Shown in pieces: positions 1 to 28,800 of a stretch of 64,000 nt of DNA. The DNA comes from Obrimoposthia wandeli (Eukaryota). The stretch is taken from NCBI GenBank assembly GCA_977020255.1, contig CDROCS010000641.1, positions 310,001 to 374,000 of the forward strand, written 5' to 3'. Positions within the stretch are counted from its first letter, which is position 1, and every line of letters begins with the position of its first letter. The notes beneath the pieces were generated by a model, which saw only the letters and a program-made list of their open reading frames with translations, was not told the DNA's origin and ran no database searches. A program made the position numbers and the translations under genes.

Positions 1-283
1 TACAAATTGCGAACTCCCAATTTTTATGAAACCTAAAGTACGTTTCCTTGTGAGATGAAAAATTAATTTCATAAATTATAACTCTGAATTCTTAAATTTA
101 TAAATTATTATGTAATTTGGCCTAGGTGCTTCTCATGTTGACTTACTTGTCTAGTTCAGTGGTATCCTCGGCGTTTTTTTGATTTGTCTGGTTTGGCGGT
201 CTTCGCGGTTTCTTGATTCTCGGATTTCTATTAGAACAATTATCGAATACAATTCTGATGTGTACTTCTGTCCTTCTTTTAAG

Positions 284-833
284 CTGTAGTGAGATTTTAT
301 AGAAATTGAGGCGAAGACTCGCTTATTTCATATCTTCTTCTGTGACTGCAAAATATATAAAAATTATTTAAAATCTTTCAACAACTGATAATTTAAAAAC
401 CTTCTTTTTTGCTGTAGTGAGATTTTATAGAAATTGAGGCGAAGACTCGCTTATTTCATATCTTCTTCTGTGACTCTGCAATATATATAAAAAATATTTA
501 AAATCTCTGCAATATCTGTGACTCTGCAAAATATATAAAAATTATTTAAAATCTTTCAAAAACTGATAATTTAAAAACCTTCTTTTTTGCTGTAGTGAGA
601 TTTTATAGAAATTGAGGCGAAGACTCGCTTATTTCATATCGTCTTCTGTGACTCTGCAATATATATAAAAATTATTTAAAATCTCTGCAATATCTGTGAC
701 TCTGCAAAATATATAAAAATTATTTAAAATCTTTCAAAAACTGATAATTTAAAAACCTTCTTTTTTGCTGTAGTGAGATTTTATAGAAATTGAGGCGAAG
801 ACTCGCTTATTTCATATCTTCTTCTGTGACTCT
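284..833. repeat. Tandem repeat with units of 128, 178 and 178 bp plus a partial unit
   Basis: TGTAGTGAGATTTTATAGAAATTGAGGCGAAGACTCGC recurs at 285, 413, 591 and 769; the longer units carry an internal duplication of about 50 bp. Confidence 0.95.
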
Positions 834-1859
834 GAAACTCCAAAACAGTGACTAATGCAGTCATGTTATATCCCTTTACTTCGTATTCAAATTTGTTTTC
901 TCCCCTTTAATTAATTCTTTCCTATATATAGTTATAATTAATTGACCTTTGTATCATGACCTAAACTTGTAAACTATTTATTTAGGTATTTTCGTAATTT
1001 AATTAATCTTAAAAAATATCTTCAATTTGTTCTTGGCCAGGACTATAAAAATAAAACTTTTTTATATTCAATTAATTTACTCCTTTTTTGAACCTCAACA
1101 ATCTGTTATAGCATAAAAATCATTTTTAACAGTGACTGTAAGTTTCCAGGTTTGTTATTGAGTATAGCTGTTGAGTAATAACATTTGAAAGTGTATTTCA
1201 TATCTGAAGAAGATCGTGGAATATTGGCTTACTCGTCCAAAATACTCAGTGGCTACATATTCCAAGAAACATAAAATAGTGAAACTGACGGTGTATGATG
1301 TACTTGTTTATTATGGGGAGAATAGAACACGTCAAAGAGCGATACGTTCTTGGAGGCGTTGGGAAAAGAAATGTCCAAACGACGAGTCAGGAAACTTGTC
1401 CACGACCTTTTGAGTGATAAACTACATCTACAAGAACGATTTTTGTGAAATACAACATCTCAATACTAATATTTTATATATTTTATTACATCCTGGTGAT
1501 ATTTTAGACTCTAACTGTTTTCTCTCTTGCTCATATCGGGCAGCACAATAATGAGGTTGTCCAGTTAATTGTACCACTTATGGAGGAACAGTTGGGCAGC
1601 ACACAATCTAAACAACAACATTAATACTGAAGTGCTTGAACTTGTGTTCCACATGAAAATTTTACGTTAAGTCGTTTGAAGTTGTGAAACAGAATGAAAC
1701 GTGTATCATTTTGGCATAAAACTGACACAATTGACTGAATTAAACCTCCACAGTTCGCTCAAATAAGTATTGTGCATTCACATTAAAACCATTTATCTAT
1801 CCTTGTATTGATTGATCCACAAAAAGCTCAAAGATTTGATACCATTTCTGAAATGAAAC

Positions 1860-4929: not shown

Positions 4930-7900
4930 TTTCGTCCAGTTTATGATTCTTGCGTATTTATTTTCTTATTTGGCCAATCTATTTTCACCTGCTTTAAAAA
5001 TTCTGGTCCTTCCCACCACATTCTCGACTTTACCAATTCTTCTACATTTATTCCTCGGGATAGTAAATCCACTAGATTTTCTTTGGTAGGAAAATACCGC
5101 TATTGATTAAGTGTTGTTTGATATCTGAATATGTTATACTCTATTTGCTACAAATGTTTTGAACAAACGATTGTGCTGTTGTATCCAGCTCAATGTGGTC
5201 ATGCTATCACTCCAGAATGTTATTTGTTTCATTTCAATTTCTAACGCTTCCGCTACTTTTCTTCCTATGGTTAATCCTACACAATCTGCCATTAACTCTA
5301 ACCTTGGTAGACATATTGTAGATATTGGGGCTATCTTTGCTTTCGCTATTTCTAATGTACTGCTCGCTTCCTCTCCCCGTCCACAAGCATACATCACTGC
5401 TCCTTGTTCGAGTGTGGTGACTGAATCAATACTATCATCCATATAGGTAGAATATAATATTGTTTCAACAGCTCTCGGGTACTTCTATTGGTAGTTTCTA
5501 GCATTCTTTTGTGTGATCAACTGTGCCAGAAACGGATATGTATTTAAACCAAATACCAATCGGTTGAACTCTAGTTGCTGCACCTTACCATCTATCCACC
5601 ATAAAAATCTAAGATACGGTTGATCTTCTTTTGCAACCTGTATCTGTAGATACATTTCCTGAATGTCGTATATCAATGCTACTGGGTGCCGTCGAAATCT
5701 TAGTATTGTTATCAAGTCACCCTGGAGTTTTGGACCACATTCTAAAGCATCATACAAACTCATTCTGTACACTTTTGCTGTTGCATCAAATACAATTCTC
5801 ACTTTTGAGGTAATTTTATCATTACGTACTACTGGGAAGTGCGGTAACAATCACTACTATTCCACTTCCTTCTTTTCTTCTACTACTCTAATATACACTT
5901 CTGTAAGTGGTCTTTTATTACTCGGGTATATGCTTCTTCTAGCTGATTATCCCGTTTAAAACGTTGTGTCAAATTATCCAATCTTCTTTTCGCCATTTAT
6001 TGACTCTTCTGTAATTTCTCTTTTTCTATCTTTCAAGGTAACTTTACCTGATACCTCTCGCCATCGTACCTCATATTTTATTTTGTCATCTGCAATAATT
6101 TATTGTTTTCAGTCAATATATTGGTTTTCTCCAGTTCTTCCTCTACTTTCAAAAAACGTTGAAGTGCCTGATCTAGTTGCTCATTACTTGTAAAATACAT
6201 CCTTATGAAATTAACCTGTTGCCGCTGGTCTACATCGACCTTCCCTACCCATGTCTACCCGAGTGGAGTCAATCGTGCCACTGGCTCTCCCTCTCGCCCA
6301 GCAATCTCTCTCAATACTCGATGTGCCCGCATACAATCGGCTCCTATAAGTACGTCCACCTTCCGCATTCTTCTATCTCCCTGAGGAAATTTTATCTTCC
6401 TGAGATGTGTCCACGTTTGTACCACATCTCTCCACTCATAAACTTTCAAGTCGCCGGTCACGTATTTACTGTGAGTGCATCTCGTTGCATTCTCTCCCAA
6501 CTATCTACCTCTTTCACTGTTAATGTCACCGAGGTGGTGGCTATTTCGTGTACTCTACCTCCGATAACACTGCATGGTACCAACTGCCTTGTAGCTTCTG
6601 CCTTCAATACCTTCGCCACCCAACTGTTGACGTAACTGGTGGTGCTACTATCATCTAATAGCCCATTTACATGCACTGTTCTTTCTCCATTTCTGAGGAT
6701 GACTGGCACGGTTCTCAATGTAATTACTTTGTTCTTTCCACCTATCTTAATGTGGTTTGTGAATTTCATCGGTGGCATTGTGCTCCTCTTCCATTCCCAA
6801 TGCACCAAGAAGTGGTGCTTTGTTGGACATCCAGCCACATTAAAAAACTTCCTTAACTTGCATTCATTCGCCCGATGGCCTTCATTAAGTCAATTAAAAC
6901 AGAGCACATTCTTTATTACGAACTCCCACCTCTCGTCTAAATACAAGCTCTTGAACTTCTCACATTGGCTTAAATAATTATTTTCTCCGCATTTGCGCAA
7001 CTCTTCTTCCACGTTGTTCACTGATCTTGGGCTCTCCTTTCCTCGTTTCTCGGTTCTCGCCCATAATTTGGAAGTTCTTCCTTATTGCCTCCGTTATTTC
7101 GTGATATTTGAAATTAGTCCCCTCTTCTTTTTTGCATCGTCTGTGTGTGAAAATTAACTTTCTTTCGCTCCATTCCACTTGTTCACTACCCGTGATACGT
7201 CAGTAGCTTTTCGTAAATACCCTGACTCTTCCCTAGCCCAGTTCTCCAAGGTGTACATATTTTCTTGTAATCTCGTTGCGTGTAAATATCTTCCCTAACT
7301 AATAATTGCTGTCTCCGGCTATAACTTAAGAGTTCTATGGAACAGCATGCCATCTCGTAACTCCCCTTCTTTACTAATTGATGTTAATCTAACTATTACG
7401 GTTTCCAGAAAACCATTCTCTTTTCCTCCATATCTTCTTTCCTATTTTTCAATTGCCACTTCATAGGCCTTGCTTGAAAATCCCAGTCTCTCCACTAATT
7501 TCAACGATTCACCTCTCAATCAATCCCGGATATATAGGAGTTTCTCGCTTGCTTCTCCACTGGCGTTGTGTACATATACTTCAAAAACTGCTTTCCACGC
7601 TGCATATTCTCTTACATTCCCGTTGAATATTTGAACTTTTAACTTCTTCAATCTTTTAAGTCCGATATTCTTTTTTGATCCATCCTTCTATCCTCAGCCC
7701 AACCAACCTCTGAGTTCACCTCTGATTTTTTCTTGATCAGTAGTTGACTGATTTCTTCATAATTTTCTTCTATTTCGTCTATCTCCTTCTTAGTTTTCGC
7801 TGCTTTCTCATCCTGCCCGTTTTTACAACACCACTCCACCACGTCCATCATCTTTCTTACTGTTTTTTCGTATTCTTCTCCATAGCTCGACCGCTGACTC

Positions 7901-8235
7901 GCTATATTTCCCATCGCTATTCCTTCTATAACCATGTTCCTTAATCTGGTTAAATTCCACTTCATTGTTTTCTTTATCTGCATCCATTCCCTTATCTCTT
8001 CTTCCACCGTCCCACCTCTGAGTCTAAGTACTAACTGAAGGGTATTTCCTCTCTGAATCTTATAATCGGATAGGATATGGCTAGCTTCAATCTGCTTACC
8101 TGCAAATATTAATCGTTGTTGAGCTGGAGGAATGCCTCCCTTGTCCTGAATCTCTGCCTTTACCTTTTCGATAATCTAATCTTATTTTACGTCCAATGTT
8201 ATCGTCTTCCCAGTAAGAGTCTTCACAAAAACCTG
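4930..8235 (-). mobile_element. Decayed, internally deleted BEL/Pao LTR retrotransposon (Ub-gag, protease, RT, RNase H; integrase absent)
   Basis: DUF1759-type gag ([23 protein letters not shown]); protease (TLRTVPV...GLLDDSSTTSY, VDVLIGAD, PVARLTPLG); RT (LPHFPVVRNDKITSKVRIVFDA, FRRHPVALIYDIQEMYLQI, RLVFGL); Pao RNase H (AKAKIAPISTICLPRLEL, FWSDS, FKTFVANRV, DLLSRG, WWEGPEFL). Many stops and frameshifts. Confidence 0.95.
8011..8235 (-). pseudogene. Ubiquitin domain (Q2-G76) in frame with BEL Gag; two nonsense codons
   Basis: Translates [73 protein letters not shown]. My count is 54/75 identical to ubiquitin with no indels. It reads straight into TVEEEIREW (ORF 7648-8007). Confidence 0.95.
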
Positions 8236-8419
8236 TTTATTATTATGCTTACACAAACGCTGGACTGAATCCGCAAACCGACCTTCCGTCGTATTTTTCT
8301 CTAACAATAATATTCATGTATAATCTCCATTTTTGACGCCCTTTACAAACCCATCAAAACCCCTTATATTTCCCGTGTCCCGTTTCCTCTGGTTTGCATT
8401 GTAACCCTTGAACAGTCAT

Positions 8420-8568
8420 GTCCATTTTATTTTCATAATTAAATTTAGCTTAATTCCCTCAGTTATCGCTTGTCTCACCACTATTTCAGTTTGAACACAA
8501 ACTCCTGAAACGTAATCAACTACCACTAAAATACCATCTGTTAATCTTAAAACAGCAGTAACTTTACT
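8420..8568 (-). pseudogene. EEF2: Captured fragment of elongation factor 2 G-domain
   Basis: [40 protein letters not shown] matches eEF2 [40 protein letters not shown]. Confidence 0.9.
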
Positions 8569-8726
8569 GTTTAACTCTATATTATTTTTATTGTCGCTAA
8601 GGAGATTGTTTGACTTGGGGTTATTTTTGGGGTTCTCCCCATCCCCATTATGTTTTAAAAGTTTAAAAAATAATCTGTTGTTAAAATAATCCATGCAATC
8701 TACAAACTCACCAAGGTCACTCTTCT

Positions 8727-8913
8727 CCGCTTTTGGGTATCCGTTGATGGTCCCATTCGAAATCTTAAAGTCCTCCAGCTCTTTGGGATCGATACCGCCC
8801 TTGTTGTAGATTGCCCCATCAAACTCGATTACCCCGATACAGCGCGCTTCATATCGATGTAAATAGCGCATTGTATGCAACCCACATTTCCGAATCCTTG
8901 GACAATGGAGGTC
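8727..8913 (-). pseudogene. GDH: Captured fragment of glutamate dehydrogenase NAD-binding domain
   Basis: [11 protein letters not shown](fs)[39 protein letters not shown] matches animal [28 protein letters not shown]...[12 protein letters not shown]. There is a 1-nt deletion near 8881. Confidence 0.9.
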
Positions 8914-9115
8914 TTTTTTAATTCCGAATCCTCCAAAACCTTCTGAATCGGTTTCAGTGTATTCTTAAAGAGATCCATATTAAGCTCTTCAAATCGTGCT
9001 CTAGTTAACGTCTCAGAAAAATCGTCACCATCATAGAACGACTCAATCTTTATTCTGGAGCTGTGTGAACCACTCAGTACACGGTTTGCCTTCTCTACTC
9101 TCTACGCAGCTTCTG
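8914..9115 (-). pseudogene. HSPA5: Captured fragment of ER HSP70 (BiP/GRP78)
   Basis: QKLRRE(fs)[61 protein letters not shown] carries BiP-specific motifs ([24 protein letters not shown]). Confidence 0.9.
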
Positions 9116-10470
9116 TTTCAGCTCCTCGATTTGCCGCGACAACGCCTGCAGTTTCATCTTTAGCTCATTGCTTACCAGCTTCTCGCTACACTTGATGATC
9201 ACTGTTATCATGTGGTGCTTCAGCGAGTCAAACACTTATTCAGATGCAAAGTCAAGTAGTGTACACCATCTATCAAGTGACGCTGGATCTGGCGAGTCAA
9301 CTTAATGCGCTTCATGATCGAGTTAAATAGACCCAGATTCGCTATCGGTTCAGTTTGCATCAGCGTGCTTGCTAACAAGCGCTCCTAACCTTCACACTCT
9401 ATTGCAAAGACACGCAAATCCGACTCAGAGCTCTTTGCTACATTTGTAAACGATATATGCGTGTATACATTTCTTTCAACGAAATTATCATTGAAAATTT
9501 TAGAACTAAATTCTTTTGATTTCCCCAGTTCCGACTGGGTCTTAGAGTAGAGATATCGGAGACTCTTTGTTTGTTGAAAGTACTCCACACATTTGTGGTA
9601 GTCGTAATTGCAGTTTCTCAACTCAGAAACCACCTCCAAAGGATCACATAGAAACGGACATTGAGAGAGAATCTTTTCAATCTTAATCTGCATCTTTGAC
9701 AACAATAATTCCAAGGCAATGGGATTTATAATTTTACACTTTCTCTCCGGATTTTGGGGCTTGTCGAGAAAGATCTGGTGGATGAGTGTGCTTGAAATTA
9801 TTGACCTCAAACACTTCCAAGTCTTTGCTGATATTGTCAAAGTTGATCAGACTGTTGGTGTAAAACTTCGTGGACTTATGTCTTGGATCAGATTTGCAAT
9901 TGAAAGACGGTGTGAAAAAGGACTATCGACAGAGAACATATTGTAGATAGAGTCGCTGATTGGCCAGGCCTCCAATGTCTGACTGGCGCCATCTTTGCCG
10001 TCCTTGACGGAATCGGATCGGTTCTTCTCGCAATCCAAGTCGATGAGCTGCTGAAACAGATTGTCCCCCTCGTTTGCTGGAGCGCTTGGTATGCAGACAT
10101 GATCTTTTGTGCCGAATATTCGAGAATATTCCTTGTAGAGACGATGGAAGGCCAACAATAACCGACGTTTGGGGTCCTCACTAGCATCGCCTTCTACCAA
10201 GGAATAACCATTATTATCGGTTACTTACTCGCGTACTATGTCCCAGTAATAAGCTCGGTCCGCTTCGCAACGCAGAAATTGAGCTGGCGTCTTATGCTTG
10301 CAACTGTCCCCGCCCAATTGACGCCAAGCCTGGTCAGAGTCAGTCCAACTTTGAATGTCCTTCTCCAGATTACTGTTGCATGCAAATTAATTAACTTCTT
10401 TTTCGTGCCTGGAGCCCATAGCCCAACTACGCTCTGCTACCATATTTTAGCGGGCATGGTTCTGACATAG
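9116..10470 (-). other. GC-richer coding-like mosaic, probably further unidentified captured fragments
   Basis: Open frames 9385-9840 and 9847-10200, plus a coiled-coil-like stretch joined to the BiP piece. Same strand as the identified fragments; no family recognised. Confidence 0.45.
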
Positions 10471-10744
10471 AATCAAAATACATAAATCCAATATCCATCG
10501 ATTTATTTTTTAAAACATTTAAAAATTCAAATCTCTGGCAACTTTCCATTGCCAATACATCAAAAAATCCTTATTATAATAATTCACATAATTTATACAC
10601 ACGCTCACACACAACCCACACGTGGCATCATAAAAACAAATCTTTATTAATGCAAACCGCATAAATTACACCTACAACAGATTATCTTTAATTTTAATTA
10701 TTTAAATTAATACAAATTTTAAACTATTGTGTCAGAACAGTGGC

Positions 10745-11925: not shown

Positions 11926-13000
11926 TACACCTCATATTTAAGTTAAAAGGAGATTCAGATGAGGAGAGAACAGATGAGCAGATAATCTTAGGTTATCGTG
12001 AGGAAAAGTTGAGAAAAGCCTTGTACGAAAAAGATACAAAAAGGCATAATTGACAAAGACTAGGAATTTAGAAATTCAAGCCATGAGAAGCGGTAAAGAA
12101 ACCGATCGAAGGTTGGAAGACTATGAAGATAATTTCGTGGTGGCATCAGGAGAGCTAACATGTTTACAAGGGTTAGCTTTTGATTTGGGAAGTCAAGAGG
12201 GGGTAAATGAGTTAGAGAAAGAATTAGAAGAAATAAATAAATTGCACGACGAAATAGGAATACTGTCAACAGAACTGTTAAGAACAGATATGGAAAGCAA
12301 AAGAGCATTCACAACAAGCAATCAATCAAATAATAGGAATGAATTTACAGAATTAAAAAGGTTAACATTACCTATATTTAGTGGTCAAAACTCAAATTTC
12401 GAAAGTTGGAAAACAACATTTAACAAATTAATCGGAAGAAAAAGGTTAGAAAACGAGCAAATTATTGCATATGCGACAGTATTTAGGATCAGAACCATTT
12501 AGATTGGTAGAAAATTTAGGATTATCAGAAGAAGTTTATGATAAAGCATTAGAAAGATTAGAGAAAAGATATGGAGACGACGAAAGAAATTATCGAAACG
12601 TATTGAAGGACGTTGAAAAGTTAAAAATAATGAGACATGATGAAGTCTTAGAATTTGAAAAGTTGTCAGAATTATTAGAAAGGATATTAATAAAATTAAG
12701 AAGGTTGAACAAAACTGAAGATTTAGGAAACAGTTACTTGTATCAAACATTCTTAAGAAAGTTACCTCGACAAGCAATGTTAGAATGGACAAGTTGGAAG
12801 AGACGGGAAGGTAGAGAAGATTGTCTAGAAGACATGCTGATATGGGCCCAGCAAAAGACGGAAGATTTAATGGAAGCAGAAGAAGTATGTCAGGAATCTA
12901 AAATAAAACCTGAGCTAAAAGACAAGTTTGTCAAAATGGACATATATAATCAATGACAAACATATCCTAGAAGGGAAACATATTTTTAAAATAAGATAGA
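11926..13000 (+). mobile_element. BEL/Pao gag fragment inserted in the lineage A copy
   Basis: ELKRLTLPIFSGQNSNFESWKTTF and YLGSEPFRLVENLGLSEEVYDKALERLEKRYG (DUF1759-type); frameshift near 12470. Confidence 0.85.
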
Positions 13001-13129: not shown

Positions 13130-13517
13130 TGTTTATTTCAAGTTTTGATTTCGGTACTATTTTGTGTAGTGTTTATATAAAAATCTGGAGCTAATAGAAA
13201 AGTACAAAGTGAACTTCCTTATTTAAAATCAGAAAATTTGATACCAGCATTCAAGTTTTTATCTAAAAGATTCATATTTCGAATAATTAATAGCATATAT
13301 ACTAATGATTTTTTTTATTATTTAGACCATCTGTATTTCTAGCTAATGACATTGTTGAAACATTAAATGTATTGAACGTCGAATATGTAACTTTGTATTC
13401 CTTACCACCCTGGGGTGTAGCTTTGAAAGCAATCAAAATGAACTTTGGTAAACGATAGTCTCTGAATATTTGATATTTATTAATTTCCAAAGAACCCCGA
13501 GGAATTGAATATGTTAC
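13130..13517 (-). pseudogene. Polinton major capsid protein, C-terminal piece
   Basis: VTYSIPRGSLEINKYQIFRDYRLPKFILIAFK is near-identical to the MCP at 44296-45516. Confidence 0.93.
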
Positions 13518-13747
13518 TGTGGTGACCTTGTTCATTCTCTCTCCCTCTTTCGCCACTTTGTGTTTTTATGTGGGTGTTAATGTGTTGTAGTTCAATGTTG
13601 ACATAATTGTGGTGCAAAGCTATCATTTGTAATTTAATTATTAATTTACTAAATCAATAAATCGTTCGTCTTACCTACTCCTATAATTATCTTATCTTAT
13701 CCCTCTATTCGTTATCCTACAGTCTCTATCGCCCGCATACGCCCGCA
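13518..13747 (+). repeat. 5' LTR of the Gypsy element
   Basis: Begins TGTGG exactly where MCP homology stops, ends CA, contains AATAAA and is followed by a PBS. Confidence 0.8.
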
Positions 13748-13750
13748 AAC

Positions 13751-13762
13751 TGGTGTCAGAAG
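13751..13762 (+). promoter_or_regulatory. Primer-binding site, tRNA-Leu type (TGGTGTCAGAAG)
   Basis: Complementary to the 3' end ...CTTCTGACACCA of tRNA-Leu; lies 3 nt after the LTR. Confidence 0.75.
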
Positions 13763-16700
13763 GAATTCCAGAGCCACAACATTTGAAGTCAAAAGAAGAC
13801 AAAACACCTCAAATACAACCTCTAGTCAAACCAACATATCCAACAACTACAGCCAATTCAACCGCAACCACTACCAATCCACAATTCATTGGAATCTTCA
13901 ATTCGACTCTCCCACAGTTCCACCAACTACTCAGCCACGCCAGAGAAGCCAAACTCCCTCAACTCACATTCTACAGATCAATTACGAGCGAAGACACCAG
14001 CAAAATAATCCTAATTGCAATTGCAAGATCACAAATTCTCTACTCTACTCAACTCTACAAACCGTCAGGAGTAAAACAACATAACAAGCATCAATAATCC
14101 TCACTACAATATCCGACAATACATTGTCAAACTAAAAGTTTGTGAAGCTAACGCGCCAGAGAAACTCAATCAAACTCAATCAAACTCAATCCCAAAACAA
14201 ACAAATACAGCTATATTCAATTTCCAAGTTAGTCACCCGCTCTCAATTCTCCAAACCATACAAACACTGGTCCTACAAGTCCTGCTCCAACCCAAGGCAA
14301 CAAAGTGTTATCACTGGGGCCACAACATAACCTTCCCTAACCTAATATTTACATTATTTTTCACACATTATTCACACATTATTTTCACAACCACATAAAA
14401 TCCCAAAATGACACACAACAAAACAGCAACACCAGAATTTTTCTAGACAAAAATCACAGCCCTAATAAGTGGTTATGCCTCACCCAAACCACCTTAAATC
14501 AGTCAGGGATTCACAATCCAAAGCACATCACACACAAAATAATCTCATCATTACCCACCGATATACTCAATGACATAACACATGATCTCACCGACATTCA
14601 CAAACACACTTCACCCTTAGATTACATCAAACACATTTTAAACCAACACTACACTATAAATAAAAAACGATTTATTTGAAGATTTATTTAACTCACCCAT
14701 CACTTTCACAAAAACCCAGCCAGCTCTTAAACACATTAAAACTAAACTGGAACACATTCAACCCAACATCACACACGACACTCACAACTCACTACTTCAA
14801 GAAGTATTTTTCCGACAACTCCTACCCGACACAAAAAAATACTAACACTTTGGAAAACAAATCTTTAGAAGAACTGGCCACATCTGCAGACAAACTACAT
14901 GTATACAACCAACTACATGTATACAACCAACCCACCTCACAACAAACATTACACATACAAAGTAACCTAACAAACAAAAACAAGTCAGAAATAGACTATT
15001 TAAAAACGATCATACACCAATAGAACCAAACAATAACATCACTAACAGAAAAGATCGCCAAACTTACAACGACCTATACACAACACACCACCAACAGACA
15101 CAGATCACCATCACCCTATTAAGACAATAAATGACAATAAACGACAATACACTAATAACAGATACAGATCACCCTCTCCACACAATAACAAAAAGCAACC
15201 TAATCCAAACTACTGCTATTACCACAATACATACGGCATCAAAACCATCAAATGCGCCACACCTTGCACATACTCAAAAAACGACTAAAATCAACAGTTA
15301 GCACACCAATTACCGTTGATTCCTCCAACATATTCACGGTGCACTCAAAAATCCACAACATCCATTTCCTCATAGACACTGTCTCTTCAGTATCTATAAT
15401 CCCATACACCATCACGCCAACACCAAGACAACACACCTCACCTATCACACTCATGGCAGCAAACCACACAGCAATAATACCTTTCAGTACGACTAACCTA
15501 ACAATAACCCTAAACAACATCCGCTACAAATGGAATTTTGTCATAGCATACATAATAGAGCCGATCATCGGAGCTGACTTTCTAGTTAATTTCAACCTAA
15601 TCATCGACTGCAAAAACAAAACACTAATACGAAACAAAACACCAGTTCATACAAACCCCCCACCCATACAACAAACTGGACAATACATAGCCAAAACGTA
15701 TTAGGCACAATATACACAAAAACAGACGCGATCAAAACACTACTATCAACTATACCACTCCAAAAACAAAACAACTTCTCTCAAAAAAATCATTACCAAC
15801 GGACGACCATGCCACGCCAAAGTAATGCAACTTCCACCAGATAAGCTAGCAGCCGCAAAAACAAACATTCACTGATTTAGAAAACAAGGCATTATTCAAA
15901 AATCCAACTCACCTTGGTCATCAGCTCTCATGATGCAACAAAAAAGATCAAACATGGAGATGCTGCGGAGACTACAGAATATTGAAGGCTAAGACGACAC
16001 TAGAATCGTATCCACTTCCACTCATAAGAGACATCACCACACGCCTAATTCACGCAACAATTTTCAGATCTCACATCAGCCTACCACAACATTCCTATGC
16101 ACACAGAGGATATCAACAAAACAGCAATCATCACACCATTCGGACTTTATGAATACACCAAGATTCCATTCGGTCTAAAAAATTCCACTGCCACGTTCCA
16201 AAGGTTCATGGATCACATATTCACAAACACAAACAACATTGTATCATACATAGACGACATCCTAATAGGGAGCAATAACTACACCGATCACATCAAAGAC
16301 ATACAAAAAGTAAAAGACATACTACAAATCACAATCTCCAGATCAACACCAAAAATGCCTTTATCACCAAGCACAAATATAATTCCTAGGACATACCATA
16401 TCACATAACCAAATCAAACCCCTACCAAACAAGACAAACACGATAAACAACATGCCAATACCAACACGGTCAAAGAAATTAGAAGCTTCCTAGGAATGGT
16501 GAATTTTTACCACAGACACAAACAAACTGCGCAGGAACACTAGCCCCTCTACACGACCTAATCAAAAACACGCACAAACAAGCAAAGATCACACTATCCG
16601 AAATTGTCATAAAACATTTCAATACAGCCAAACAAGCACTCACAGACGCTACAACATTAAATTTCCCAATTTCAAACGCGCCACTTATGCTCACCACAGA

Positions 16701-18163
16701 CACTTCAAATCATGCAATAGGAGCAGTTTTAAATCAAACAACAGAAACCACACAACAACCAATTCTTCTCAAAGAAACTGAAAGTACACCAGACCAAATA
16801 CTCAACATACGATAGAGAATTACTGACCATATACGAGGCACTAAAACACTTCGAAACACATCTAGAAGGCAACACTTTCACAATTTACACAGATCATAAA
16901 CCTCTTCTGCACATCATCACCATAAAAACCCTTGCCACGCCAAATCAGGCCAATCAACTACATCTCGCAATTAAATTGTACTCTCAAACACATTGCAGGA
17001 AACACAAGCATCATAGCAGACACACTTTCACGCATACCACAAAACAATATACATCATAACGCAAAATATCTTCTCAGACGCAGACATCAGACACAAACAA
17101 GACATATCCGAATTCAAACGAGGAAACTTACATCTCACAAAAACAAACGACATATGGTACGAAACCACTCCCCCCGGTTTAACTAGAGTCATACTCCCAA
17201 AACCACTACGTACGACATGCATAAAACACATCCACGACTTCCATCACCCCGGCATAAAAGCAACATTCGACATAATCAAACAAACTTACATATGGCCATG
17301 CATGCGCAAAGACATCCAAACATTCATAATAAAATGCATCAAATGCAACAACAAATCACAAAAACATTACAAAATAATTCCACTCACCGTCACTAGCAAA
17401 AACGTATTCTACACAATTCACATTGATCTTGTCGGACCACAACATTCAAACACACATCTCCTGACAATAATAGACAATAACACAAGCTGGTTTTCCGCCA
17501 TACCCATACCCATCCGCATATATATGGAACAAAATATACAAACATTGGTTCACCACATACGTTTTCCCTTCAAAAATAATCACAGATCAGTGACGGCAAT
17601 TCATCAGCAAAACATTCAATGACTGCTGCAACAATAAAAACATCAAACACACAACCACAACCACTTACAACCCCCAATCAAATTGCAAAATAGAACGACT
17701 ACACTGTCGAATTAAGGAAAGTTTGACATGTTTTGACAACCAAAAGAATTGGCAACACACATTCACAACTGCATCATGGGTCTCAGAAACACCCCTCACC
17801 TAGACGACAACAAAAGCCCTGCACATCGAATATTCAAAGCACACATACCACGCATATACAACAAACACGACACGCAAACAAACACACAAATGAAACCCAA
17901 ATCTAGTGAACATGAAACCCACTCACAAGCATACATAAAAATACACAACCCTCACTCACTAGACCCAAAATACGAGGGTCCATACACCATCATCCGACAC
18001 AACACCAACAATACAACGCTCATTAACAAAAACCAAAAGCCAACGCTCATCAATAACAGAAATTTGAAAATCACCCACCCAGAGAAACACAAAAACATAC
18101 CACAAACACACAAACACAAGACAGTAAAATTCACCACCGAAATACGTCTGACAAACATCACTC

Positions 18164-18776
18164 ATCAGTACCATCTTCATTTACAACTTTTAATTTAATA
18201 TTTAGCAAAGTATCTTTCAAATCCAGATAATCTTCTTCAGATGCATGAATATTAAATTCTATATCATTTAAATTTCCACCAGTAATTGAATTGATTTGAA
18301 TTATTTCTTCTAAACTTGAATTTTCAATCACTTCTTGTGACAATGGTCTATCGAAAATACACAATTCAGATTTTATACTAGTCATTTTGGAAAATAGTAC
18401 CTTTAAGACGTTTGTTTATACTATTTAAATTATTTCCTTTACGTTTAAGACCCTTTCCATTTTGTTTAACACAATTTGCAACTTTATTTAAACTCTCAAA
18501 AGCATTATTTTTTAATTTTAGAATCAAAGTTTTGACTTCGTTTAGTGTATTTTCTTTGAGAGGTGAAATTAAGTTTTTTGGATTTGTTAACGCAGTTCCT
18601 GTCATTTCACCAAGTACATTAGCAGAACTTGTAGCAACTGCTAAACCAACATTTTTAATGAATGGAATAGCTAATCTAGAAATAGTTTGTAACAATCCAG
18701 AGCCATATTGTTTACCAATGAAATAAGGAAGTTCGCCGCCCTGTAGACTTTTGCTATAAAATTTCATATCACTCAA
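18164..18776 (-). pseudogene. MCP N-terminus plus upstream core-like ORF of the decayed lineage A copy
   Basis: MTSIKSELCIFDRP and KFYSKSLQGGELPYFIGKQYGSG are near-identical to 43898-44520. Confidence 0.95.
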
Positions 18777-27374: not shown

Positions 27375-28800
27375 GTTGGTGTATATGTCCGTCTAATCCA
27401 CCCTTCCCCCGGGGCGTAGTACTGTTATATTTGATTATTATTTCCCACTAATTCATTAGCAATAATTTCTGTTTTCAGTAATAACAGAAACAAATAATTA
27501 TCAGCAAAATTATATTTTCAGCAATAACAATAAAATAATGATCAGTTAAAATTCTGTTTTAACCAGTAAATGCAATAACAATGGTCTGCAATAATTTCGA
27601 TTTTCTGTAATAACCGTAATAATTATAATCAGCAATAATTTCTGTATCGTTTTCTGTAATAACAGCAATAATTTCTGTATTCTGTAATAACAATAATAAA
27701 TATGGTCAGTAATATTCTCTGTTTTCTGTAATAACAGTAATAAATATAGTCAGTAATATTCTCTATTTTCTGTAATAACAGTAATAAATATGATCAGCAA
27801 TAATTTTTGTATTCTGTAATAACAGTAATAAATATGATCAGCAATAATTTCTGTATTCTGTAATAACAGTAATAAATATGATCAGCAATAATTCTTCTTT
27901 TCTGTAGCAATTTAAAAAAAGTAGTTTTAGAAATTAAATCAAAGCTATCTATGCCAAACAATTTTATATTCATTTTTCTATAATAAGTGACATTACATAA
28001 ATTTGCAGACACACACGTAAATCGGCACCATTACACAGATAGAAGCAGTAAAATAACATGTGTGTATGAGGTGCACTTAAAATTGGATAGGCAGAAAAAT
28101 CGATAGAAGATGCAGTCATTTCTTTTGTTTTATCTGCTACTTCGCGGACAATTTTCCTACCGCGAAGCACAAGATAAAACCTGGACATCACTGACAAAAA
28201 TTGCTGTTCGACTGTGGGCACTTCGATAAATTGATTTAAATTTAAATTGTAATATTTTAATTCCCAACCGTACTGCTGTCCTTTAAAACTGTGCATGTAT
28301 TCGGATTGAAATTTTTTGTATGTGTGTCCAATCCATCCCAACCCCTCCAATTTTTAAAATGTTACTTGGAGTGAAATTTCATGCATGTATGTATTAATTT
28401 CACATTTGACCTCAAAAGTGATTAAAGAAGATCACGGGAATCCATATTAACCTCAGCGACTTATCGCAGACGAGATTTAAGATAATACTTTTATGTGAAT
28501 ATATGATTACTATTTTTAAGGACAGATTTTAGATTAATAAATTACAGCATGTATGTTAAATGGACAAAATATCTAGGTCAGATTTATATAATTTATAGTA
28601 GAAAAAACAAAATACAAGACAAAATTAATTTCAATACATTTATTAAACAAATCAAATATAAAACACCATATTGGCTTCACTCAAAGTCCAAAGAGACTGT
28701 ATTTTCCCGTCATCAGCATAATATCCATTGAACATAATATTCCTTAGTTCTTCGTCTAAAATTGCAGCAATCAAATAACCTAGATCATCTATAAAAGCCA
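27374..28800 (+). mobile_element. Second left-end fragment of lineage B, interrupted by a tandem array
   Basis: AGTTGGTGTATATGTCCGTCTAATCCAC start; 28260-28800 is colinear with 19670-20260. Confidence 0.8.
27450..27905. repeat. Degenerate tandem array of about 45 bp (CTGTAATAACAGTAATAAATATGATCAGCAATAATT)
   Basis: Repeated units visible. Confidence 0.9.

What the first reader, a model, noticed from the sequence alone, without database searches (positions are those of the whole stretch)
8416..10470. Chain of housekeeping-gene fragments (BiP-GDH-unknown-eEF2) upstream of Ub-Gag
Seen: at least three recognisable host coding fragments lie on the retrotransposon's sense strand, uninterrupted and mostly joined in frame. 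BiP ...LEDSELKK runs into [13 protein letters not shown] at a K-T junction that both proteins could share. GDH, an unknown piece and eEF2 form one 154-codon ORF. All come from abundant mRNAs. Inference: serial capture of co-packaged mRNAs by RT template switching, building a chimeric ORF. Such a locus could also yield small RNAs against host genes.
Basis: partly seen in the sequence, partly recalled or inferred. Interest (0 to 1): 0.8.

Follow-up and report, generated by a model that had tools for sequence, protein, structure and literature searches.

The report
Retrotransposon carrying in-frame host gene pieces
A dead copy of a BEL/Pao jumping gene carries a chain of pieces copied from host messenger RNAs (a kinesin, BiP, glutamate dehydrogenase, eEF2) in front of its ubiquitin-Gag gene. 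Related copies elsewhere in the genome carry other combinations, nearly always joined in one reading frame, so this is a real and unusually modular case of a known capture process.

Summary

- **Not an assembly artefact.** The BiP|GDH junction recurs at about 22 loci on other contigs.
- **Modular family.** Sister subfamilies carry other modules in the same place: eEF1-gamma, LicD-like, ABC ATPase, and other stretches of BiP. The window copy is a recombinant of these modules; only one other full match exists (C1214).
- **Spliced-mRNA origin.** The GDH piece runs uninterrupted across exon junctions of the multi-exon GDH gene on C1485. All cargo in the reading frame is sense-oriented. Clean junctions show 5-7 nt of microhomology.
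- **New point.** The element's first ORF starts in U5, is translated through the PBS, and in better copies runs in frame through the cargo into linker-Ub-Gag. About 12 frame relations are all in frame.

I infer selection for an unbroken ORF1. I also infer that the ubiquitin RGG site lets host deubiquitinases remove the variable N-terminus; this is untested. No RNA data exist.

The scan had already noted a similar capture (eIF3d) on other DNA of this genome. I class this as a new variant of LTR-mediated retroposition.

The parts
10443..10742 (-). 5' LTR (approximate). Homology among copies begins at 10739-10742. A TATA-like box lies near 10590. The ORF1 ATG is at 10496-10498, inside U5.
10432..10442 (-). 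Primer binding site TGGTAGCAGAG, complementary to the 3' end of initiator tRNA-Met (tRNA sequence from my own knowledge). It lies inside ORF1 and is translated as YGSRAWLGYG. This copy has a TAG stop at 10427-10429.
9107..10384 (-). Captured tail and stalk of a kinesin-14-like gene. It is 90-91% identical to a 754-aa ORF with a kinesin motor on C1043 (L004 778-3042).
8911..9124 (-). Captured BiP (HSPA5) fragment, 95.3% identical to the BiP gene on C3923, whose product ends in RDEL. Its 5' junction with the kinesin piece overlaps in an imperfect 17-nt homology. This copy has a 1-nt deletion just after that junction.
8716..8915 (-). Captured glutamate dehydrogenase fragment. It is joined to BiP in frame at the shared pentamer AAGAC (codons K-T). 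It crosses an exon-exon junction of the C1485 GDH gene. This copy has one frameshift and lacks about 111 nt of the GDH 3' part that most copies keep.
8578..8712 (-). It is present upstream of Ub or eEF2 in all subfamilies and is part of the open frame. Many copies have a 54-nt tandem duplication here.
8385..8577 (-). Captured eEF2 G-domain fragment, 72.5% nt and 69% aa identical to the host eEF2 genes. It is the most diverged module. In this copy a frameshift splits it.
8239..8384 (-). Pre-ubiquitin stretch of unknown origin. It is in frame with eEF2 and Ub in better copies (L023, L009).
8011..8238 (-). Ubiquitin domain ending LRLRGG, followed directly by Gag, whose first residue is Thr. Met1 of Ub is replaced in every copy examined. 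This copy has two stops.
6900..8010 (-). Gag. The equivalent region of copy L022 matches DUF1759.
5137..6889 (-). Protease and RT remnants of BEL/Pao type (PF05380 at 5137-5484). The element decays below about 5137.

Best explanation
This is a dead member of a BEL/Pao LTR-retrotransposon family with an unusual first ORF. The ORF starts at an ATG in U5, is translated through the primer binding site, and continues as N-terminal peptide, variable cargo, linker, ubiquitin, Gag. The cargo consists of internal pieces of spliced host mRNAs. These were copied into the element during reverse transcription by pairs of microhomology-guided template switches between co-packaged RNAs. Different captures arose at different times. 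Copy-choice recombination between subfamilies then shuffled them. Each variant was amplified by retrotransposition. The window copy combines the kinesin, BiP-GDH and eEF2 modules. Because the insertion zone is coding, only sense, in-frame, stop-free captures could keep Gag-Pol translated, which explains the in-frame joints. I infer, without a test, that host deubiquitinases cut after the ubiquitin RGG. That would release Gag from whatever lies upstream and make the N-terminus a tolerated dumping ground.
For: - **Anatomy.** LTR, PBS, cargo and Ub-Gag-pol lie in order on one strand.
- **Amplification.** There are 82 matches in the genome. The BiP|GDH junction is at about 22 loci, the eEF2 module at about 17 and the kinesin module at about 7. 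Only C1214 shares the whole arrangement.
- **Other modules in the same slot.** EF1G, LicD, ABC_tran and other parts of BiP are confirmed by Pfam.
- **Spliced origin.** The C1485 GDH exons at 121642-121779, 122815-122979 and 128328-128468 match the contiguous TE-borne GDH at 89%, 80% and 96%. The introns between them are 1.0 and 5.3 kb. C3178 has the same exon boundaries.
- **Microhomology.** TGAAA at leader|kinesin, GAAGCTG within an imperfect 17-mer at kinesin|BiP, and AAGAC at BiP|GDH. The chance of 5 or more matching bases is about 0.001 per junction.
- **ORF1 starts in U5 and crosses the PBS** in nearly all copies.
- **Long open frames run through cargo.** L025 has 344 aa (eEF1g-BiP-GDH-linker). 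L011 has 196 aa up to the RGG site (GDH-linker-Ub). L020 has 407 aa (LicD-linker-eEF2-gag). L023 has 307 aa (kinesin-GDH tail-linker-eEF2-Ub). L003 has 255 aa (kinesin-BiP-Ub). L005, L007 and L008 run from the ATG through the PBS into the kinesin piece.
- **Ub Met1 is never ATG**, and LRLRGG-T is kept.
- **Independent read support.** An independent unitig bridges kinesin|BiP. Loose ends at 8911 and 8716 match the host BiP continuation and the undeleted GDH form.
- **Precedent.** The mechanism is described for animals, including a BEL element (PMC5131818).
Against: - Only GDH gave an informative intron test. BiP, eEF2, kinesin, eEF1-gamma, LicD and the ABC ATPase lie in single large exons.
- I could not fetch the C1485 DNA, so the exon boundaries are known only to within a few codons, from protein matches.
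- There is no RNA or protein evidence of expression.
- Ubiquitin cleavage is inferred only.
- dN/dS of the cargo (0.64-0.78) is only slightly higher than that of Ub-Gag (0.51), so 'disposable junk' is not demonstrated.
- Most copies are degenerate.
- One beta-tubulin piece, in U5 of L020, is out of frame.
Confidence: 0.75

Rival explanations
1. The capture happened at the DNA level: gene fragments or processed pseudogenes were inserted into a genomic copy of the element by double-strand-break repair, Pack-TIR or Helitron activity, or LINE-mediated retroposition, and were then carried along.
For: Microhomology is also typical of end-joining repair. Most source genes have no introns in the captured parts, so RNA origin cannot be shown for them.
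Against: All cargo modules in the reading frame are in sense orientation and in their native frames. The pieces are internal, with no poly(A) tails or target duplications. GDH lacks two introns. The cargo sits between the PBS and gag of an LTR element, and no TIRs or Helitron ends were seen around it.
Confidence: 0.12
2. The in-frame joints are chance or simply reflect youth. The cargo lies in an untranslated leader and has no relation to Gag translation.
For: Young retrocopies in other animals are often still in frame with their parental genes (PMC5131818). The window copy itself is full of stops.
Against: About 12 frame relations between independently defined frames (PBS peptide, kinesin, BiP, GDH, eEF1g, ABC, LicD, eEF2, Ub) are all in frame, against 1/3 each by chance. 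An ATG upstream of the PBS is conserved. Ub has lost its own ATG in every copy.
Confidence: 0.1
3. Assembly chimera: the junctions are artefacts of collapsing repeats.
For: The region is repetitive, and the sequencing runs found come from one sample only.
Against: Identical junctions occur at 88-94% identity on about 20 different contigs, each with its own substitutions. Independently built unitigs bridge a junction.
Confidence: 0.01

Closest known systems
LTR-mediated retroposition in metazoans (Tan et al. 2016, Genome Res, PMC5131818)
   Same: Partial host mRNAs lie embedded in LTR retrotransposons in sense orientation. Microsimilarity of about 6 bp marks the switch points. Chimeras with several parental genes occur, secondary rounds of retroposition follow, and a BEL element is among the examples.
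   Different: In those cases the retrocopy replaces internal element ORFs, giving non-autonomous chimeras that are mostly single-copy. Here the pieces sit in a fixed slot at the N-terminus of ORF1, upstream of an apparently complete gag-pol. They are kept in frame, exist as many alternative modules and are amplified to tens of copies.
Maize Bs1 retroelement (Jin and Bennetzen 1994; Elrouby and Bureau 2001, 2010; summarised in PMC13317346)
   Same: Serial transduction of fragments from three host genes into an LTR element creates a hybrid ORF.
   Different: Bs1 is a plant element, non-autonomous and low in copy number, with one fixed arrangement. It has no ubiquitin spacer and no family of alternative cargo arrays.
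Acute transforming retroviruses (Gag-Onc fusions; Swain and Coffin model, my own knowledge)
   Same: Host coding sequence is captured through RNA and non-homologous recombination during reverse transcription, and is expressed as an in-frame fusion with Gag.
   Different: Oncogenes replace viral genes downstream of gag and are selected for their function. Here short, functionally incoherent fragments lie upstream of Gag.
Ubiquitin insertions in cytopathogenic pestiviruses (PMC13517609, PMC2850149) and natural Ub fusion genes UBA52 and RPS27A
   Same: A host ubiquitin coding sequence, acquired by RNA recombination, sits directly before a viral protein whose free N-terminus is produced by host ubiquitin hydrolases. 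Mosaic inserts with extra host or viral pieces upstream of Ub are seen.
   Different: Those are RNA viruses, and cleavage has been shown experimentally. Here cleavage is only inferred from the intact LRLRGG followed by Thr.
Yeast Ty1 (my own knowledge)
   Same: The gag ORF starts in U5 of the 5' LTR, so the PBS lies within coding sequence.
   Different: Ty1 belongs to a different superfamily (Copia) and has no cargo zone and no ubiquitin.

Membership tests
BEL/Pao LTR retrotransposon | Pao-type pol and gag domains (PF05380, DUF1759) plus integrase | tested here: met
   PF05380 at window 5137-5484 (2.4e-11). DUF1759 in the gag of copy L022 (3e-14). An rve domain in copy L006, below the curated cut-off (25.8 against 32.6 bits).
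BEL/Pao LTR retrotransposon | LTR followed by a tRNA-complementary PBS | tested here: inconclusive
   The shared 5' boundary is at 10739-10742, and there is an 11-nt match to the 3' end of tRNAiMet at 10432-10442. The window copy lacks its 3' LTR, so LTR length and termini were not verified. The tRNA sequence is from memory.
LTR-mediated retroposition (template-switch capture) | Host-derived piece flanked on both sides by sequence of one LTR element, in sense orientation | tested here: met
LTR-mediated retroposition (template-switch capture) | Microsimilarity at the switch points | tested here: met
   5 nt, 7 nt exact within an imperfect 17-mer, and 5 nt at the three junctions where both parents are in hand. 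The kinesin|GDH-tail junction in L023 is too diverged to score.
LTR-mediated retroposition (template-switch capture) | Intron-less relative to the parental gene | tested here: met
   Met for GDH only. The test is uninformative for the other modules, whose sources have single large exons.
LTR-mediated retroposition (template-switch capture) | Partial mRNA without a poly(A) tail or target-site duplication of its own | tested here: met
   All modules are internal coding segments joined directly to one another.
Pack-TIR / Helitron DNA-level gene capture | Fragments lie between TIRs or Helitron ends and retain introns | tested here: not met
   The fragments lie between the PBS and gag, no inverted termini were found, and GDH is spliced.
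Ubiquitin-fusion processing module | Complete Ub fold ending in RGG, directly followed by a non-proline residue of the cargo protein | tested here: met
   LRLRGG-T is kept in two Ub subtypes and many copies.
Ubiquitin-fusion processing module | Cleavage by host deubiquitinases | not testable with these tools
   Needs expression and a cleavage assay.

The most novel reading that the evidence does not exclude
The ubiquitin placed before Gag acts as a host-cleaved insulator. It turns the N-terminus of ORF1 into a disposable, freely evolvable zone. This retrotransposon lineage would then continuously capture, recombine and amplify in-frame pieces of host coding sequence, acting as a natural exon-shuffling workbench inside an autonomous element. 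Some cargo might also benefit the element, for example by supplying translation starts, by boosting expression as Ub fusions do, or by acting as decoys.
Probability: 0.35. Interest if true: 0.8.

Novelty: new variant of a known kind. Interest (0 to 1): 0.6.

Why it matters
Capture of host mRNA pieces by LTR elements is known, but it is usually seen as isolated, dead-end chimeras. Here a whole family shows a dedicated, coding, in-frame cargo slot with at least eight different host-derived modules that recombine and spread. It is coupled to a ubiquitin-Gag fusion that offers a simple reason why such additions are tolerated. If the cleavage idea holds, it explains why ubiquitin-Gag elements are frequent in this genome. 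It would also give a tractable natural system for studying template-switch recombination, exon shuffling and how retroelements exploit host deubiquitinases.

Tried and rejected
1. **C2224 as the GDH source gene: rejected.** The GDH-like locus there looked like exon plus intron. However, it carries a frameshift and a stop. It continues into the family linker exactly as type A copies do. It then jumps into PR and RT pieces and an LTR-like stretch of the element. It is also intron-less relative to C1485. It is therefore an element-borne relic with a longer GDH piece.
2. **The 'unknown piece' as a GDH intron: rejected.** It occurs in subfamilies without GDH and is part of the open frame.
3. **Intron tests on other modules: uninformative.** The sources of BiP, eEF2, kinesin, eEF1-gamma, LicD and the ABC ATPase are single large exons.
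4. **RNA evidence: none.** No RNA runs were found, and the only DNA runs come from one sample. Laying the unitigs only confirmed the junctions.
5. **Search for the eEF1g-BiP-GDH chimera among 5.8 billion protein clusters.** Only ordinary BiP and eEF1-gamma proteins were returned, with at most 37% coverage.
6. **Protein atlas search with the kinesin tail: no hit**.
7. **dN/dS of cargo against Ub-Gag: inconclusive.** The values were 0.64-0.78 against 0.51. The pairs are not independent and include decay after insertion.
9. **No tRNA gene in the window** to check the PBS against.

Full report
**What is there.** The feature lies on the minus strand. Reading 5' to 3' on that strand, the parts are as follows.

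- The sequence shared by all copies of the family starts at 10739-10742.
- A TATA-like box sits near 10590.
- An 11-nt match to the complement of the initiator tRNA-Met 3' end (TGGTAGCAGAG) lies at 10442-10432. The tRNA sequence is from my own knowledge.
- Next comes 1.3 kb (10384-9107) that is 90-91% identical to the N-terminal tail and stalk of a 754-aa ORF on contig C1043. That ORF carries Microtub_bd and Kinesin motor domains, so it is a kinesin-14-like gene.
- BiP follows at 9124-8911. It is 95.3% identical to a BiP gene on C3923 whose 633-aa exon ends in RDEL.
- GDH lies at 8915-8716, 94.5% identical to C2224.
- eEF2 lies at 8577-8385, 72.5% nt and 69% aa identical to three eEF2 genes.
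- A further 146 nt of unknown origin follow.
- Ubiquitin lies at 8238-8011 and ends LRLRGG.
- Gag follows, then BEL/Pao protease and RT remnants down to about 5137. PF05380 matches in the window, and DUF1759 matches the gag of a sister copy.

The window copy is dead. It has a TAG five codons after the PBS, a 1-nt deletion after the kinesin|BiP joint, a frameshift in GDH, a frameshift in eEF2 and two stops in ubiquitin.

**It is a family, not an accident of assembly.** A DNA search of the 1.35-Gb assembly gave 82 matches. I mapped every fetched locus onto the window and onto the host genes. This shows a modular family.

- **Type A** (at least 15 loci, for example L010-L019) reads PBS, eEF1-gamma C-terminal domain, BiP, GDH with a longer 3' part, linker, Ub-Gag. 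It has no eEF2.
- **Type B** (L020, L027 and others) reads PBS, LicD-like fragment, linker, eEF2, Ub-Gag.
- **Other variants** carry an ABC-ATPase fragment followed by a different stretch of BiP (L054, L059), another BiP stretch plus an unidentified piece (L060), or ABC-ATPase plus GDH (L056).
- Pfam confirms EF1G, LicD, ABC_tran, HSP70 and Tubulin in these pieces.
- The BiP|GDH joint is identical at about 22 loci. The eEF2 module is at about 17 loci and the kinesin module at about 7.
- The complete window arrangement recurs only on C1214, at 88% identity.

The window copy is therefore a recombinant of modules that were amplified separately. The 54-nt duplication inside the linker marks a likely crossover region.

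Independently built unitigs from public reads of the sample bridge the kinesin|BiP joint. They also show loose ends that match the host BiP continuation at 8911 and the undeleted GDH form at 8716.

**RNA or DNA capture.** Most source genes in this genome are single large exons across the captured parts. This holds for BiP, eEF2, the kinesin, eEF1-gamma, LicD and the ABC ATPase, so they say nothing either way.

GDH is informative. A 138-aa stretch of the longest element-borne GDH piece matches three separate exons of a multi-exon GDH gene on C1485:

| C1485 exon | Query residues | Identity |
|---|---|---|
| 121642-121779 | 1-46 | 89% |
| 122815-122979 | 41-95 | 80% |
| 128328-128468 | 92-138 | 96% |

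A second gene on C3178 has the same boundaries. The window's GDH piece covers residues 41-111 and the type A pieces cover 39-138. Both run uninterrupted across the junction that holds a 5.3-kb intron in C1485. The piece therefore came from spliced RNA.

All cargo modules in the reading frame are sense-oriented internal segments without poly(A).

Three junctions have both parents in hand, and each shows shared bases:
- TGAAA at leader|kinesin
- GAAGCTG within an imperfect 17-mer at kinesin|BiP
- AAGAC at BiP|GDH

With a per-base match probability of 0.26, a run of five is expected about once per thousand junctions. This is the signature described for LTR-mediated retroposition in animals, where the median microsimilarity is 6 bp (PMC5131818).

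**The C2224 locus.** I first took this locus for the GDH source gene, because the GDH sequence there is longer and has splice-like flanks. It is not the source. It has a frameshift and a stop. It continues into the family linker just as type A copies do. It then jumps into protease and RT pieces and an LTR-like stretch of the same element. It is a decayed element that preserves an earlier, longer GDH capture. The BiP insertion later truncated that capture.

**Why in frame.** In nearly every copy an ATG lies 5-25 codons upstream of the PBS, in U5. The frame it opens is translated through the PBS as YGSRAWLGYG. In the better copies this or a connected frame stays open through the cargo:

- L005, L007 and L008 run from the ATG through the PBS into the kinesin piece, in the kinesin's own frame (218-273 aa).
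- L025 has 344 aa across eEF1g-BiP-GDH-linker.
- L011 has 196 aa across GDH-linker-Ub, up to the RGG site.
- L020 has 407 aa across LicD-linker-eEF2-gag.
- L023 has 307 aa across kinesin-GDH tail-linker-eEF2-Ub.
- L003 has 255 aa across kinesin-BiP-Ub.

I count about twelve relations between independently defined frames, and all are in frame. The chance expectation is one third each. Ubiquitin's own Met1 codon is replaced in every copy of both Ub subtypes. LRLRGG followed by Thr is kept.

I conclude that the slot between the PBS and Gag is coding. A capture could spread only if it kept ORF1 open. The one exception is a beta-tubulin 5' piece inside U5 of a single copy (L020), upstream of the PBS and out of frame.

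**Inferred role of ubiquitin.** Proteins fused behind ubiquitin are released by host ubiquitin hydrolases. Natural Ub-ribosomal protein genes and the ubiquitin insertions of cytopathogenic pestiviruses work this way (PMC13517609; PMC2850149). A ubiquitin directly before Gag would free Gag from any N-terminal addition, which would make the upstream region tolerant to cargo.

This step is inference only. A crude dN/dS comparison is compatible with weaker constraint on the cargo but proves nothing: BiP cargo 0.64, GDH cargo 0.78, Ub-Gag 0.51.

**Serial capture.** Divergence from the host genes differs strongly between modules: eEF2 72% nt, LicD 72% aa, kinesin 90% nt, eEF1g 90% aa, BiP 91-95% nt. 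The modules also have different distributions among subfamilies. This fits several captures over time plus recombination, not one event.

**Comparison and novelty.** The closest known cases are:
- LTR-mediated retroposition in metazoans (PMC5131818)
- maize Bs1, which has three transduced fragments in a hybrid ORF (PMC13317346)
- retroviral Gag-Onc fusions

What differs here is fourfold. The coding cargo slot is fixed, at the N-terminus of ORF1 in an element that keeps gag-pol. The modules are numerous and interchangeable. They are amplified to tens of copies. They are coupled to a ubiquitin-Gag fusion.

I found no paper describing ubiquitin-Gag in BEL/Pao elements. I found no chimeric eEF1g-BiP-GDH protein in a 5.8-billion-cluster database. 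Earlier notes of this scan report ubiquitin-Gag elements and one eIF3d capture elsewhere in this genome.

**Limits.** There are no RNA data. The C1485 DNA could not be fetched. LTR length is unverified. Only a sample of copies was examined, each with 1.5-kb flanks.

Noticed in passing
window 13500-18200 (+ strand): A second retroelement (protease, RT and integrase-like ORFs) has an extreme strand composition: A 40%, C 28%, G 10%, T 22%. The gag-like part just upstream (12050-12956) is G-rich and C-poor. The switch at about 13.3-13.5 kb is sharp. This could be two elements, or strand-asymmetric hypermutation.
   Followed up: partly
L062 (G000:C2224:155000-164999), about 5720-2820 on the minus strand: A decayed copy of the same family preserves a longer intron-less GDH fragment covering two exon junctions. 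The fragment is joined through the linker directly to protease and RT pieces and an LTR-like end.
   Followed up: yes
L020 2852-2995 (minus strand; G000:C2012): The first 40 or so codons of beta-tubulin, including its start codon, sit inside U5 upstream of the PBS of one copy. They are out of frame with ORF1.
   Followed up: partly
G000:C4073:241175-270418 and many other contigs: The ABC-ATPase cargo resembles intact ORFs of about 513 aa that occur in 9.58-kb tandem units. It also resembles roughly 1,500 degenerate fragments genome-wide. Its source may itself be a highly repeated element and not a housekeeping gene.
   Followed up: no
whole assembly: About 16 intact intron-less GDH ORFs of about 450 aa lie on separate contigs, alongside the multi-exon animal-type GDH genes. 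Together with earlier notes of bacterial operons, this suggests that the assembly contains bacterial contigs.
   Followed up: no
L018 437-1075 (sense; G000:C193) and L011 after the PBS: Further cargo modules of unknown origin (acidic and coiled-coil-like sequences) follow the PBS peptide in frame in some copies.
   Followed up: no
window 218-879 and 27542-27950: Tandem repeats of 178 nt (four copies) and 44 nt (seven overlapping matches).
   Followed up: no
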